Below are positions 31,117 through 43,180 of a stretch of 57,584 nt of DNA, in pieces. Source of the stretch: Phyllobates terribilis (lineage: Eukaryota); the NCBI RefSeq assembly GCF_046119375.1, contig NW_027367499.1, positions 1 through 57,584 on the forward strand, given 5' to 3'. The notes beneath the pieces are model-generated. The model worked only from the letters and a program-made list of their open reading frames with translations, was not told the origin of the DNA and searched no databases. Position 1 is the first letter of the stretch. The number at the start of each line of letters is the position of its first letter. The translations under genes were made by a program, and so were the position numbers.

Positions 31117-31389
31117 CCTCGCTTTGGTCAGAGGAGAGGAGAGACGACGACGACACCGTAGGGTTTATTGGGTTAAGTTGACAATGAAATGTGGGTAAAC
31201 AGAGTCTATGGGTGGACCGGTTTTTGAACCCTCAGTAGTCAGTAACACTACTTCAAATCTTGAATGAAACGAAAATGAAACGGGTGAAATTATAACTTTT
31301 TAGTTTTTTCCTCAAGTAATTGGAAGAAGATTTTTTTACGTCCCGGCTATATGTCGAAAAGTGGTTTTGCTAACCCTCGTACACGAAAA

Positions 31390-31568
31390 CGTTATGATGG
31401 GCACCGCACATGGCGCGATGATGGAAGACCAAATGGCCGTGACGGCAGAGGCGAACATTGGCGTGACGCTGGACAAAGCTGAAGACGTCACGTCGTAAAT
31501 TTTTAACAGGTGTCGTGACGACGGTGGCGAGATACAACGTGACGGCAAAGTTTATAATAGGCGTGACG
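31390..31568. repeat. Left-terminal array of CGTGACG motifs at ~24-bp period
   Basis: Motif starts at 31390*, 31414*, 31438, 31462, 31486 (reverse), 31514, 31538 and 31562 (* = degenerate). Spacers are unrelated to each other. Confidence 0.85.
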
Positions 31569-32118
31569 GTATGGTCTTTTATTGATAGGAGATGTTTTTG
31601 ATGTTCGTAAGTATTTTTATTAGTTGTAAATGGTTATTTAAGCCTTTTTATGCTATTTTTGACAAGAAAATCACATTAAATGATAGTGTTAGGCTGGGTG
31701 GGTCTGTAAGGGTGTTCGGAAGGATGAAAACGTACTTGTATTGAATGAAAGGGATGTATTAGGTGGTTTTAACAATGTTGTGTGATATGTAATGACCTAT
31801 ATTGAGATCTTGTGACATTAAGTGACACTTGAATTCATCCCCGTACTAATGTCTATTTTGTAACAGCTAGTGTCCTCATGTTTCCAATATTTTGTAGTTT
31901 AATGGTAAGAGAGTATGAAGTTGGAAGCATTGCTACTAGTTGTGCATGAATAAAATAGCACAACAAGCCACAACTTTATTTAATGTGTACAAGAAAATAG
32001 TCCAACAATGCATAAATTCAATGTCAACAGCCCATGAAGACACTGCATAGTGAACATGAAAATCACCCCTTAAATAGGCCATGTATGTGAAATTTGTGTT
32101 ATAGCCCAATGTCTTGGT

Positions 32119-32200
32119 CGTCACGTCCGGAGTGACGCAGAACGTGACGCCCTAACCCACCCAAGTCGTCACGCCAGGGATGGTTTCCATCGTCACGCGC
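32119..32200. repeat. Internal CGTGACG/CGTCACG array upstream of the transposase TATA box
   Basis: Motifs at 32119, 32143, 32167 and 32191 (exact 24-bp steps). The last extends to CACGCGC (32194-32200). TATA-like ctatttaaa at 32347. Confidence 0.85.
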
Positions 32201-32418
32201 CGCAAGCTAGACTGAAAAGCCAGAAGTAGGCTGTCGTATCAAGCCCATGCCTCTGTAATTATGTCTCCAACTCAAGGGTGCAGCGACATGACCGACACCT
32301 GCAACATTTGAACCATTTTCATCCACAAAAATAGCTTCATGTTCTTCTATTTAAACCCCTACACCTCACCATCTTCATTCACCAAATCACTTACAACATT
32401 TCTCTCCATTCTAACAAA

Positions 32419-40500: not shown

Positions 40501-41272
40501 TTCTTAGTAAATTATCTATAAAATCCACGTATTTCCTATAAAATTATATTTATTTATGTAAATTCATAAAATAATTCCTAAAAATCCTAATTGTTCTAAT
40601 TCTTTGAAAATATCTATAAAATCCACTTAAATTCCTAAAAATACAGAATTATTTACTAAATTCGTAAATAAAACCTAGAAAATTCATTAAATCTAATTAA
40701 AACCTAAAAAAATATTATTTACGCATATAAAAAATTCCTCTAAATACCTAAAAAATCCATTAAAAATCATAAAAAATCCATTAAATATTATTTACGCATA
40801 TACAAAATTCCCTTTATTTACGGATATAAAATACAGTACTTTAACACAAGAAAATTAATTAAATTTATTTTCCCCCCTAAATACCTAAAAAATCCATTAA
40901 AAATCATAAAAAATTATAAAAAATTTCCTCTACAACCAAATACCCATAAAATCAATAATCCAACTAAATAGTCAATATATATTAACATTTTAACCATAAA
41001 TTTTTATTAATTCACATTATTTTAACTAATTAACAAGATTAAATACTCAAACTCCCAATAATTCAACCTAAAAACCAATCTATCCAAATATCATCCAAAT
41101 CAACTCAAATCTTCCATAAAATTCAAGATTCAAACAATATTATGTCTAAATATTACATTAATTCAACAAATTAACATATATAACTACTAAATCTTCCAAA
41201 AACAACTATAAAAACTTATAGATCTACAAATAAAACAACTCAATCAAGCTAGAAAATTGAAGAACTTACCAT
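37550..41272 (-). CDS. Plant Mobile Domain (PMD, MAIN/MAIL-like) protein, 730 aa, intact; exons 41272-41270, 40116-39484, 39394-39188, 39111-38455, 38377-38228, 38140-37721, 37672-37550
   Basis: PMD hallmarks GGPENPELL, FVERWQPETSSFHLPFGEMTITLHDV, WAWGAGLLASTYREL, SWIYNYFP, VDWLPY and EPYMPDRVLRQFG. Six GT-AG introns, all phase 0, join the exons without a stop. TATA-like tataaaa on the minus strand at ~41455. The ATG-only first exon and the last exon are inferred. Confidence 0.85.
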
Positions 41273-41475
41273 AATAACTTTGAATTGGGTGTTGTTGAAG
41301 GAAGAACAACGAAACAAGTGAACTAGGAGGACCGGATTCAATCAAAACAACCAAAAGGAGAGTTGAAGGAGCTCGAATGAAGGAGAGGGAGTAATGGAGT
41401 GAAATGGAGGCGGCAGAGAAGGTAAGTGGGAGGGTTTAGGTCGATTCTGGCTTTTATAGCCAAAATCGGGTCTGG

Positions 41476-41626
41476 CGTGACGCCAGAAACCGTTTGGCGT
41501 CGCGCCTTAAACCCTTTCTGGCGTTGCGCTGGGTATTGTTTCCAGCGTGACGCCGAATTCCCCCCCCCCCCCGCGACGATGTAAATTAAACTCCCCGTGA
41601 CGCTATATTTGTACCCCCGCGTGACG
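41476..41626. repeat. Right-terminal CGTGACG motif array at ~24-bp period
   Basis: Motif starts at 41476, 41498*, 41522*, 41546, 41572*, 41596 and 41620 (* = degenerate). Lies immediately upstream of the PMD TATA box. Confidence 0.85.
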
Positions 41627-43180
41627 ATCTAGGCTGCGAGGGTTAGTAAAAAATTTATGCGACAAATAGTAATCACCGATATTTATAGCGTCGTTGATCA
41701 TGAATACCATGACCTCCACGGCCACCACAAACTCCACAACCACATCGTCCATCATGTCCACCGTCGTGTCATTGTTGACCATATGTGTCGGCGTTCCCAT
41801 ATTGGAAGTCGTTGTCAACAGGGTTAGCCTTAGGAGGATCCATTGAGCCAATAGACATCGTATTGTGATTTATCATCAATAGTTCATTATTCTTTTTCGT
41901 CACCAGCAATATTCTTAACAAGTCAGAGTATTTTTTAAACTTTTTTGTCTATAATGTTATTGTAACAACGTCTTAGATGGATTTATGGTAGAATATGTTT
42001 TCTCTAATATTTTTGCTTAGATTTTTTGTTCACCACATAGCCTCAACATAGTAGTGATTTTGTACATAACACTACTATATACACTTATGAATTTTAAAGT
42101 CCTGGAACCTTAAGTCGTTTCATTGATGTATTGCTTGTGGGAGTAACATATCTTTTTGATGTCCATATCCTTCTCCCTCACAAATCCAAGGGATCCTCAT
42201 GAAACGAATATTCAGTCTTGAAACTTTCATGTATGTGGTGGCGGAGAAATACAAGAGCTTTGACCTTTTCTTGTTATATGGTTTTATTTTTATCCACTAT
42301 GGTACTCTCAAGTCCATGTGCCTTGAGGTAAGATACAACATCATATTTCCATTTTAGGTACCTTTGACCAGACGGGTCAAGAATTTCAAATTCTCGTTGC
42401 GTGATTTTTTTCCATTTTCTACAAAATATGAAATGGAAGAATATTAATTAGTATTGTCATTACTATATATATGGTGGATTAATTCATCATATGACCAGAG
42501 AAAAAATACCATTACATGTCACTATAGGTATATAAGCTATAAGTATACCATGTGGTTAATTTCAACATTATATATGTATAACATGTAATCAAAGAGAGGT
42601 GCGAAAACATAATAATCATATAATATAAGGATAATGTAAGGAAGTTATGCAAGTATACTTATGACGGAAAACTTAAATAGTGATTATTCTCTTTTATCCC
42701 TTTATATTTATGGTCCCCCCTATCCCATTTTTTCCGTCCTTATCTTCTACCTCCTCAACTCCATTTTTAATCTCCTCTTCCATTTTATTTCAAAACATTT
42801 CCATGGATTCCGATGAGATTTTTCGTCGGTTTAGAGCTAATAATGATCGGTTTTAAACCAAGCTTTTCATTTACCTTGTTATAATCATGATTATCGCTAC
42901 CATCCTCATCATTTTGGTTTCAAAAACTCCATTGTGAAATCAAGGAAAGAATTTGAGGAGATTTAAACCAGACTAGTGGTAAAAGGGTATATACAAAGAG
43001 AAGGCATAGACTATGATGTCATTATAGTCTATACCATCCTCATCCTTTTCTAGTATCTTGTGTATTTGTTTTAAATCTAGTAATATGTTTATATTTTTAC
43101 TAAAATTATTTTTAGATCTAAGAAAAAAATCAAGTTTCTGATGTAGAAGATCCTGCATATTGGCAATTACAGATAATATT

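What the first reader, a model, noticed from the sequence alone, without database searches (positions are those of the whole stretch)
31338..41677. Three-gene Mutator-like element: transposase-OTU + Myb/SANT-like protein + PMD, a candidate self-regulatory or anti-silencing module
Seen: inside one pair of inverted ends lie a transposase (+), a small spliced gene with its own TATA box (+) and a convergent PMD gene (-), with phased motif arrays at both ends and at the transposase promoter. Established: MULEs can carry accessory genes (PMD; Ulp1 protease in Kaonashi; VANC anti-silencing proteins in VANDALs). Host PMD proteins MAIN/MAIL1 and Harbinger-derived Myb/SANT proteins (HDP2, ALP2) act in chromatin silencing control. 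Inference: a DNA-binding protein, a PMD protein and a deubiquitinase-like domain together could target and modify the element's own chromatin. I do not recall this combination being described, but cannot confirm novelty.
Basis: partly seen in the sequence, partly recalled or inferred. Interest (0 to 1): 0.85.

Follow-up and report, generated by a model that had tools for sequence, protein, structure and literature searches.

The report
Two-gene Mutator transposon plus orphan ORF
This is a decaying copy of a plant Mutator-like transposon whose conserved core is two genes (a transposase fused to an OTU protease, and a facing PMD gene) framed by regularly spaced DNA motifs. The proposed third "Myb/SANT" gene is an orphan reading frame that related elements lack.

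Summary
At about 31339-41677 there is one Mutator-like element. It has family-specific termini, three 24-nt-phased CGTSACG arrays (14 sites against 1.4 expected), a + strand transposase (FAR1-type DNA-binding region, MULE, SWIM-like motif, OTU) and a convergent PMD gene.

I confirmed the OTU domain by profile (OTUD1, E 5e-6) and by fold. The PMD gene has an open six-exon, 661-aa model.

Three things correct the finding:
- **The transposase is broken here.** It has an 8-bp deletion at 33603/33604 and a premature TGA at 36055.
- **The middle gene is not demonstrably Myb/SANT.** Pfam gives no hit even at E 10, and 1.84 billion representative proteins hold no true relative.
- **The middle segment is not conserved.** The 1.37-kb segment (36170-37534) is missing from all related loci that span that position (L001, L003, L005). 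Each has transposase and PMD facing each other across a short spacer.

The conserved unit is therefore two genes, both under purifying selection (dN/dS 0.03-0.20), plus the motif arrays. The array core is kept across three lineages while the flanks change. MULE-OTU fusions, MULE-PMD association and the PMD anti-silencing idea are already published. Two other first-reader notes report two-gene copies elsewhere in this genome. I found no RNA evidence.

The parts
31339..41677 (.). Whole Mutator-like element, about 10.3 kb
   Evidence: Family-specific termini at both ends. Imperfect 10-bp TSD. Colinear with L001/L003 over 31588-36169 and 37535-40942.
31339..31385 (+). Left terminal inverted repeat; core CTATATGTCG...CTAACCCTCG
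   Evidence: Three-way alignment with the window's right end and the L001 left end.
31438..31568 (.). Left terminal array: six CGTSACG units, spacings 24/24/28/24/24
31588..31862 (.). Non-coding block about 89% identical to L001/L003, better conserved than the exons
   Evidence: No Rfam hit and no RNA-structure signal.
32119..32197 (.). Promoter-proximal array: four CGTSACG units at 24 nt, about 150 nt upstream of TATTTAAA (32348)
   Evidence: L001 has the same second array at 795-843.
32419..36057 (+). Transposase gene. Inferred exons: 32419-32577, ~33126-34016, 34097-34603, 34686-35856, 35950-36057. Broken in this copy.
   Evidence: Pfam MULE. Exon-by-exon tblastn with the L001 ORFs. Splice model open from 33598 to 36057, 734 aa.
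33603..33604 (+). Site of an 8-bp deletion (TGGACCGA in L001) that shifts the transposase frame
35470..35856 (+). OTU-type cysteine protease domain (Cys box DGNCGYR, His box NHWVSV)
   Evidence: Invariant motifs in alignment A4. PDB profile hits to OTUD1, OTUD5 and viral OTUs. Foldseek.
36055..36057 (+). Premature TGA. It reads GGA in all five X1 contigs and in L001, where the frame runs 33 codons further.
36170..37534 (.). Lineage-specific spacer segment. L001/L003 have only about 190 bp here and L005 has a spacer of about 400 bp.
36560..37155 (+). Orphan two-exon ORF of 174 aa: exon 1 36560-36712, GT-AG intron 36713-36786, exon 2 36787-37155; TATAAAT at 36489-36495
   Evidence: Coding-like codon usage. 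No family and no homologue.
37712..41272 (-). PMD accessory gene, 661 aa. Exons: 41272-41270, 40116-39484, 39322-39188, 39090-38455, 38377-38228, 38140-37712. The N-terminal part is a low-complexity Gly/Tyr-rich region, followed by the PMD domain.
   Evidence: Pfam PMD. Homologue alignments. Open model with five GT-AG introns.
40309..40822 (.). Cluster of all six CGTAAATAA nonamers of the window, inside PMD intron 1
   Evidence: tandem repeats.
41452..41458 (-). TATAAAA of the PMD promoter, about 20 nt inside the right array
   Evidence: Sequence read directly.
41476..41626 (.). Right terminal array: four exact CGTSACG units plus three degenerate ones, period about 24
41631..41677 (-). Right terminal inverted repeat

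Best explanation
This is a mutated, probably non-autonomous copy of a MuDR-style two-gene Mutator-like element family.

The left promoter drives a transposase of about 950-980 aa. It has a FAR1/WRKY-type DNA-binding region, a MULE DDE core, a SWIM-like zinc motif and a C-terminal OTU cysteine protease. The right terminal repeat drives a convergent 661-aa PMD protein gene that sits where mudrB sits in MuDR. Both promoters and both termini carry arrays of a near-palindromic site (core CGTSACG) spaced every 24 nt.

Inferred mechanism: the arrays are high-density landing pads for an element-encoded, probably dimeric, DNA-binding protein. That protein marks 'self' copies for transposition and keeps the two promoters active. 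The PMD protein, a structural relative of the VANC anti-silencing factor, would act as the accessory or anti-silencing partner. The OTU domain would act as a deubiquitinase or a processing protease.

The 1.37-kb segment between the two genes, with its 174-aa ORF, is a later acquisition of this lineage only. It is not part of the conserved machinery.

Shown here: the anatomy, the domains, the breaks in the transposase, conservation of the two genes and of the array core, and absence of the middle segment in relatives. Inferred: who binds the arrays, and what PMD and OTU do.
For: - Domains: (FAR1 PF03101 in the L005 orthologue).
- Two-gene convergent layout in the three related loci that span both genes, from metagenome assemblies: L001, L003 and L005. 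L004 covers only the PMD gene.
- Purifying selection: transposase dN/dS 0.03-0.16 and PMD 0.20, at dS 0.6-0.9.
- Array core and 24-nt period are conserved while the flanks differ: GGCGTSACGCC-like in the window, TTCGTSACGAA in L001/L003, AAACGTSACGTTT in L005, which has 35 sites in 7 arrays including one inside an intron.
- The PMD model is intact. The transposase is broken.
- The PMD ORF has a weak DUF1985 (VANC domain) hit, E 0.0026.
- Literature: VANC binds short motifs arrayed in the non-coding parts of its own element (PMC5735166). PMD-C proteins sit on specific, partly palindromic motifs and oppose Polycomb silencing, and a role for TE-borne PMD-C as an anti-silencer is being tested (10.1101/2024.09.27.615353). 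MURA and MURB interact (PMC12973397). The AtMu1 transposase activates cognate copies in a sequence-specific way (10.64898/2026.08.24.746577).
Against: - No transcription evidence. Three RNA-labelled runs laid nothing on 32250-38200, and X1 behaves like DNA, with no splice joints.
- No binding data, so the array reader could be the transposase, PMD or a host factor.
- The TSD is imperfect (8/10), so single-event insertion is inferred rather than proven.
- PMD clade membership (A, B or C) was not tested by phylogeny. It rests only on the nearest named hits, MAIN-LIKE / MAIN / PP7 long-form homologue at 35-40% identity.
- Distant OTU-MULE relatives in Erythranthe have neither a PMD gene nor the arrays within 10 kb. 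OTU and PMD are therefore not obligately linked.
Confidence: 0.7

Rival explanations
1. The element carries three cooperating genes. The middle one is a Myb/SANT-like DNA-binding protein that targets PMD and the OTU deubiquitinase to the element's own chromatin.
For: - The ORF has a plausible TATA box, ATG and in-frame GT-AG intron.
- Codon usage is coding-like in both exons in the predicted frame.
- A 96%-alike copy in run X1 keeps it open, with 5 synonymous and 7 non-synonymous changes, a rough dN/dS of 0.4 that is not significant.
- Protein-language-model features placed some Myb_DNA-bind_3/4 clusters among sub-threshold neighbours, at 0.83-0.85.
Against: - Pfam lists no family for exon 2 even at E 10.
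- No word-sharing homologue among 5.8 billion proteins.
- phmmer against 1.84 billion representatives returns only three repeat-protein artefacts: RTX, HA-domain repeats and a tandem-repeat protein.
- The metagenome scan found nothing.
- The atlas tool itself rates the family call as probably wrong, since only 3 of the 10 best share a clan.
- The single-sequence AF2 model has low confidence and is mixed alpha/beta rather than a three-helix bundle.
- The whole segment is missing from L001, L003 and L005.
Confidence: 0.1
2. The middle ORF is not a functional gene. The 1.37-kb segment is fast-evolving 3' intergenic spacer, or a transduplicated or filler fragment of the kind MULEs often pick up. 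The ORF is then a chance open frame or a decaying one.
For: - It lies exactly in the 3'-3' spacer where relatives have 190-400 bp.
- It has no homologue anywhere.
- By my own rough estimate, about 0.3 stop-free frames of this length are expected by chance in six frames of 1.4 kb.
- Its divergence from the X1 copy (about 3-4%) is no lower than in the flanking non-coding DNA (about 2% over 36000-36468).
- The X1 contigs give almost no depth over its 3' end, 0.74 at 37083-37139.
Against: - Codon-usage scores for both exons equal those of held-out real exons and exceed those of three control stop-free ORFs.
- No frameshift or stop within the coding part of the X1 copy.
- No TIR or TSD of a nested transposon at the segment borders.
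Confidence: 0.45
3. The CGTSACG arrays are ordinary subterminal transposase-binding sites, read by the FAR1/WRKY-type N-terminal domain, or host bZIP (TGACG-type) enhancer elements. The PMD protein does not read them. PMD would then be a MURB-like helper that binds the transposase, or a captured host gene with no sequence specificity.
For: - The arrays sit at both termini, where a transposase must bind.
- The family's transposase carries a FAR1 DNA-binding domain.
- The AtMu1 transposase alone activates cognate copies in a sequence-specific way.
- MURA binds MURB through its N-terminus.
- The heptamer contains TGACG, the core recognised by plant TGA bZIP factors. This last point is from my own knowledge and was not tested.
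Against: - The arrays also lie next to both TATA boxes, and in L005 inside an intron. That resembles VANC targets more than classical end-binding sites.
- The distant OTU-MULEs that lack PMD also lack the arrays.
- A palindromic site suggests a dimeric reader, whereas the known FAR1 site is not palindromic. This point too is from my own knowledge.
Confidence: 0.4

Closest known systems
MuDR of maize (mudrA transposase plus convergent mudrB helper, each transcribed from a terminal repeat)
   Same: Two convergent genes, with the accessory gene driven from the opposite terminal repeat. A MULE DDE transposase with variable termini. The accessory gene is lineage-restricted.
   Different: The accessory protein here is a PMD protein, not MURB. 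The transposase carries a C-terminal OTU protease. The termini are short imperfect repeats followed by phased motif arrays, not ~200-bp long TIRs.
VANDAL21/Hiun of Arabidopsis (VANA transposase, VANB, VANC anti-silencing factor; PMC5735166)
   Same: A MULE with an accessory protein whose fold is related: the literature reports DUF1985-PMD structural similarity, and there is a weak DUF1985 hit here. Short motifs are arrayed at high density in the non-coding parts of the element's own DNA, including introns and promoter regions. The motif version differs between related lineages.
   Different: VANDALs lack TIRs, whereas this family has them. The motif here is near-palindromic with a strict 24-nt period and unrelated spacers, not a tandem duplication of whole units. 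No VANB equivalent is present. An OTU domain is present. Binding and hypomethylation are untested.
PMD-carrying MULEs of grasses and Amborella (PMD-C fused to the transposase; PMC5418596, PMC12973397)
   Same: A PMD domain of the MAIN/MAIL-like kind carried by a Mutator-like element. The same published speculation that it serves in anti-silencing.
   Different: Here PMD is a separate, oppositely oriented gene with its own promoter and a long low-complexity N-terminus, not a C-terminal fusion to the transposase.
OTU-fused MULE transposases of Medicago truncatula (PMC1702500) and Erythranthe guttata (P0004, P0005)
   Same: The architecture WRKY/FAR1-type DNA-binding domain, MULE, SWIM, OTU, with the DGNCGYR Cys box and the H(W/F) His box.
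   Different: The Erythranthe loci show no PMD gene and no CGSTACG-type arrays (that is, CGTSACG arrays) within 10 kb. Identity to the window is only about 24%.

Membership tests
Mutator-like element (MULE / MuDR superfamily) | DDE transposase of the MULE / Transposase_mut type | tested here: met
   PF10551 at 6e-15 and PF00872 at 7.5e-6 in ORF 34044-34607.
Mutator-like element (MULE / MuDR superfamily) | Terminal inverted repeats | tested here: met
   About 35 nt, about 74% alike, and shared with the terminus of relative L001. L005 has 111-nt inverted arms at 83%.
Mutator-like element (MULE / MuDR superfamily) | 9-11 bp target site duplication | tested here: inconclusive
   The best candidate is 10 bp with 8/10 matches in AT-rich flanks. 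No exact repeat of 7 nt or more was found.
Mutator-like element (MULE / MuDR superfamily) | WRKY/FAR1-type N-terminal DNA-binding domain and SWIM zinc motif | tested here: inconclusive
   FAR1 PF03101 passes its cut-off in the L005 orthologue, and the window's exon 2 aligns to it. The SWIM CxC..CxH motif is visible (CKCVNMTRDGLPCYH), but PF04434 was not reported even at E 10.
OTU cysteine protease superfamily | Catalytic Cys box and His box in an OTU fold | tested here: met
   DGNCGYR is invariant in six sequences and the H(W/F) box is conserved. The profile hits OTUD1 4bop at E 5.4e-6, OTUD5 and nairovirus OTUs. The AF2 model (domain pLDDT about 75) gives only OTU domains among the top 50 PDB hits. 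Pfam PF02338 itself did not reach significance.
Plant mobile domain (PMD, PF10536) | Match to the PMD profile above the curated cut-off | tested here: met
   111.8 bits against a cut-off of 34.9 for exon 4. The C-terminal exon scores 36.5 bits and exon 5 has E 0.0025. 196 homologues, all carrying PF10536.
PMD-C clade (MAIN / MAIL type) | Phylogenetic placement within clade C rather than A or B | not tested
   Only the names of the nearest annotated hits point that way: MAIN-LIKE 1, MAINTENANCE OF MERISTEMS, PP7 long-form homologue. I built no tree with reference clade members.
Myb/SANT-like DNA-binding domain (PF12776 Myb_DNA-bind_3 / PF13837) | Significant match to the family profile, or to member proteins | tested here: not met
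   No Pfam family for 36787-37152 at E up to 10. No homologue. The exhaustive phmmer search found only repeat-protein artefacts. Atlas neighbours are below threshold and inconsistent.
VANC-type sequence-specific anti-silencing system | Element-encoded DUF1985-like protein | tested here: inconclusive
   The PMD ORF has a sub-threshold DUF1985 hit: E 0.0026, 18.1 bits against a cut-off of 35.1. Structural similarity between PMD-C and DUF1985 is taken from the literature.
VANC-type sequence-specific anti-silencing system | High-density arrays of a short motif confined to the element's own non-coding DNA, with lineage-specific variants | tested here: met
VANC-type sequence-specific anti-silencing system | Protein binds the motif and causes loss of silencing marks | not testable with these tools
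   This needs EMSA, DAP-seq or ChIP, plus methylome or H3K27me3 profiling.

The most novel reading that the evidence does not exclude
The PMD protein is the sequence-specific, dimeric reader of the 24-nt-phased CGTSACG arrays. Together with the transposase-borne OTU deubiquitinase, for example by removing H2A ubiquitin, it keeps the element's two promoters free of Polycomb or methylation silencing. That would be a VANC-like self-recognition system built from a PMD, with the protein and the motif flanks co-evolving between lineages.
Probability: 0.15. Interest if true: 0.8.

Novelty: new variant of a known kind. Interest (0 to 1): 0.42.

Why it matters
A published open question is whether transposon-borne PMD proteins are anti-silencing factors (bioRxiv 10.1101/2024.09.27.615353 calls it a hypothesis under test).

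This family offers a clean natural test case:
- a separate, intact PMD gene that is under purifying selection;
- a sharply defined candidate target motif whose core is kept, and whose flanks change, across three lineages;
- an OTU deubiquitinase on the partner protein.

It also shows that the attractive three-gene picture does not generalise. The third ORF is a lineage-specific orphan. That matters for anyone annotating accessory genes in MULEs.

Tried and rejected
- **RNA evidence.** Two run searches found only one holder, X1. X1 behaves like low-coverage DNA, with no splice joints. Three RNA-labelled runs of a related label laid nothing. Expression and splicing therefore remain untested.
- **Homologues of the middle ORF.** The word-index search, exhaustive phmmer, the JGI metagenome scan and the scan's own index were all blank or gave artefacts.
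- **More relatives.** A metagenome scan with the transposase found none.
- **Nested-transposon origin of the middle segment.** There is no TIR or TSD at its borders. The only flanking direct repeat (13 nt, 12/13) is at chance level. A cheap-gap global alignment to L001 gave no clean breakpoints.
- **RNA explanations for the conserved block 31588-31862.** No Rfam hit and no RNA-fold signal.
- **Other copies in the window.** None, other than the self-match.
- **Comparison with published motifs.** I could not compare CGTSACG with the published MAIL1/MAIL2 motifs (M1M, M2M) because their sequences appear only in figures.
- **dN/dS against L005.** It failed because synonymous sites are saturated.
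Full report
**What is there**

The stretch is plant DNA of about 32-54% GC. Host genes (an ABC transporter and an NPH3-family gene) and other transposon fragments (Copia RT and gag, a CACTA transposase) surround it.

Between about 31339 and 41677 lies one Mutator-like element. 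Its two extremities share an imperfect inverted terminus, CTAT.TGTCG....TTTT.CTAACCCTCG, about 74% alike over about 35 nt. The same sequence opens the left end of an independent relative, L001. The ends therefore belong to one family rather than being chance look-alikes. The best target duplication is 10 bp with 8 of 10 matches, and no exact repeat of 7 nt or more flanks the element. That fits an old insertion.

**The motif arrays**

All 14 CGTSACG heptamers of the 57.6-kb window fall in three arrays:
- 31438-31568, at the left end;
- 32119-32197, about 150 nt upstream of the transposase TATA box;
- 41476-41626, at the right end, about 20 nt from the PMD TATA box.

Dinucleotide shuffles give 1.36 sites on average and never more than 5. 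The modal spacing is 24 nt. CGTGACG and CGTCACG are reverse complements of each other. The site is therefore a near-palindrome whose centre base only sets its orientation, and the flanks (GGCGT.ACGCC-like) are themselves symmetric.

**The transposase**

Pfam finds MULE (6e-15) and Transposase_mut in ORF 34044-34607, and a ZSWIM RNaseH-like stretch just upstream.

The 449-aa ORF 34708-36057 gave no significant Pfam hit. It does show a SWIM-like motif, CKC...CYH, and a DGNCGYR / NHWVSV pair. I aligned it with its few relatives (P0001-P0005). The profile built from that alignment hits the OTU domains of OTUD1 (E 5.4e-6), OTUD5 and nairoviruses. An AF2 model of the domain retrieves only OTU proteases among its 50 best PDB matches. 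The OTU call is confirmed.

A five-exon model with canonical splice sites is open from 33598 to 36057. This copy is nevertheless damaged in two places:
- An 8-bp deletion lies between 33603 and 33604, relative to the intact 319-aa ORF of L001. It shifts the frame inside the DNA-binding region.
- The TGA at 36055 reads GGA in all five X1 contigs and in L001, where the frame runs 33 codons further.

**The PMD gene**

On the minus strand, Pfam PMD matches three ORFs (5e-32, 4e-9, 2.5e-3). Using alignments to homologues I built a six-exon model:
- 41272-41270
- 40116-39484
- 39322-39188
- 39090-38455
- 38377-38228
- 38140-37712

It is open for 661 aa and all five introns are GT-AG. The start codon is followed at once by a 1153-nt AT-rich intron. 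The N-terminal 210 residues are low-complexity and rich in Gly and Tyr. The nearest named relatives are called MAIN-LIKE 1, MAINTENANCE OF MERISTEMS or PP7 long-form homologue, at 35-40% identity.

**Relatives**

Protein searches led to contigs from plant DNA in metagenome assemblies:
- L001 and L003: one lineage, about 82% nucleotide identity to the window.
- L004: a PMD-only fragment of that lineage.
- L005: 14 kb, with PMD 55% and transposase about 57% identical to the window.

L001, L003 and L005 all have the transposase and the PMD gene facing each other. L005 looks complete, with 111-nt inverted arms about 8.7 kb apart.

Between the window and L001/L003, dN/dS is 0.03-0.16 for three transposase exons and 0.20 for the main PMD exon, at dS 0.6-0.9. 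Both genes have therefore been under purifying selection.

The arrays are conserved as a design. The core is CGTSACG and the period is 24 nt in every lineage, but the flanks differ: TTCGTSACGAA in L001/L003 and AGAAACGTSACGTTTCT in L005. L005 has 35 sites in seven arrays, one of them inside the intron between the MULE and SWIM exons. More distant OTU-MULEs of Erythranthe guttata have neither a PMD gene nor the arrays within 10 kb.

**The middle gene**

- TATAAAT at 36489;
- ATG at 36560;
- exon 1 to 36712;
- an in-frame GT-AG intron, 36713-36786;
- exon 2 to the stop at 37155, giving 174 aa.

Its identity as Myb/SANT-like fails every test I could run:
- No Pfam family, even at E 10.
- No word-sharing homologue among 5.8 billion proteins.
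- An exhaustive phmmer search of 1.84 billion representatives returned only three proteins, all made of internal repeats (RTX, HA-domain repeats, a tandem-repeat protein), which are score-summing artefacts.
- A metagenome scan found nothing.
- Language-model neighbours included some Myb_DNA-bind_3/4 clusters, but at 0.83-0.85. The tool itself rated the family as probably wrong.
- The single-sequence structure model was poor, with pLDDT 54.

More important, the whole segment 36170-37534 is missing in L001, L003 and L005. L001/L003 have about 190 bp between the points where homology resumes, and L005 has a spacer of about 400 bp. tblastn with the 174-aa protein finds nothing in any of them. Because the outgroup L005 lacks the segment too, a gain in the window's lineage is the parsimonious reading.

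The segment is not private to this assembly. Run X1, a different coded organism label with DNA-like contigs, holds it at about 96% identity, contiguous with the transposase 3' end. In that copy the listed coding differences are 5 synonymous and 7 non-synonymous, with no indel. That gives a rough dN/dS of about 0.4, which is not significant.

A codon-usage log-odds score, trained on exons of this window, puts both exons of the ORF in the predicted frame at +0.12 and +0.18. That is as high as held-out real exons (0.08-0.17) and above three control stop-free ORFs (0.03, -0.04, -0.20). The ORF may be a real young gene, and I give that roughly even odds. Either way it is an orphan, and it is not part of the conserved module.

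**How it most likely works**

The conserved unit resembles MuDR: a transposase and a convergent helper gene, each driven from one end. It also resembles VANDAL: an accessory protein plus dense arrays of a short motif in the element's own non-coding DNA, with lineage-specific motif versions (PMC5735166).

Four published results bear on the mechanism:
- PMD-C proteins occupy specific, partly palindromic promoter motifs and oppose Polycomb silencing.
- Their fold resembles the DUF1985 domain of VANC.
[quoted passage not shown] Ikeda et al. speculated the same earlier (PMC5418596).
- A recent preprint shows that a MULE transposase alone can activate cognate copies in a sequence-specific way.

I therefore read the arrays as binding platforms for an element-encoded dimeric protein, either the PMD protein or the FAR1-type domain of the transposase. 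The platforms would mark cognate copies and keep both promoters active. I read PMD as the accessory or anti-silencing partner. The OTU domain could be a deubiquitinase acting on chromatin, or a processing protease as Babu et al. proposed (PMC1702500). None of this could be tested here.

**Novelty**

Several pieces are already published:
- MULE-OTU fusions are known from Medicago (PMC1702500).
- PMD-MULE association is known, mostly as C-terminal fusions (PMC5418596, PMC12973397).
- The anti-silencing idea itself is published.

I found no paper that combines PMD, OTU and transposon. A separate convergent PMD gene paired with an OTU-transposase, plus phased palindromic arrays, appears to be an undescribed variant.

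Two other first-reader notes (s1-238372, s1-198977) report two-gene OTU-transposase/PMD MULEs elsewhere in this genome. Another (s1-209117) reports a different palindrome with a central C/G tiling a PMD-carrying MULE. These notes are unchecked leads, but they agree with the two-gene reading.

**Limits**

- The organism is unknown to me.
- There is no RNA evidence of any kind.
- I compared only one extra copy of the middle segment, and only through a summary table.
- The PMD clade was not placed by phylogeny.
- I could not resolve whether the 8-bp deletion is shared by other copies. X1 contigs seem to break near that site.

Noticed in passing
window 31588-31862: A non-coding block just inside the left terminal array is about 89% identical to L001/L003. 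That is better conserved than the coding exons (about 82%, with pS 0.4-0.5). It has no ORF, no Rfam hit and no RNA-fold signal, and it starts with a conserved GTAAGT. It may be a cis-acting element or a leader intron.
   Followed up: partly
window 40309-40822: All six CGTAAATAA nonamers of the window (0.66 expected) lie in the 1153-nt first intron of the PMD gene, among AT-rich tandem repeats with periods of 73-99 nt. This may be a second motif cluster.
   Followed up: partly
L005 7804-7900: In the distant relative, a five-unit CGTGACG array at exact 24-nt spacing sits inside the intron between the MULE and SWIM exons of the transposase. This recalls the intronic VANC target arrays of VANDAL21.
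   Followed up: partly
L005 11640-11750 and 11927-12037: The distal terminal array of the L005 element is duplicated 287 nt apart. There are also further internal arrays at 9535-9657 and 10197-10293.
   Followed up: no
window 39484-40116 (- strand): Exon 2 of the PMD gene encodes about 210 residues of low-complexity sequence: a charged Lys/Arg/Glu stretch followed by Gly/Tyr-rich repeats. It is 76% conserved in L003 and raises local GC to 54%.
   Followed up: partly
window 7173-9616, 16426-18675, 25348-26142, 46378-46884, 53664-54395: Context of the element. Host-like genes: an ABC transporter fragment and an NPH3-family gene. Other transposon remnants: Copia reverse transcriptase, Copia gag and a CACTA Transposase_21.
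   Followed up: partly
window 32575-32905: Intron 1 of the transposase gene holds several short tandem repeats with periods of 20, 32 and 39-40 nt. X1 copies differ here by small indels.
   Followed up: no
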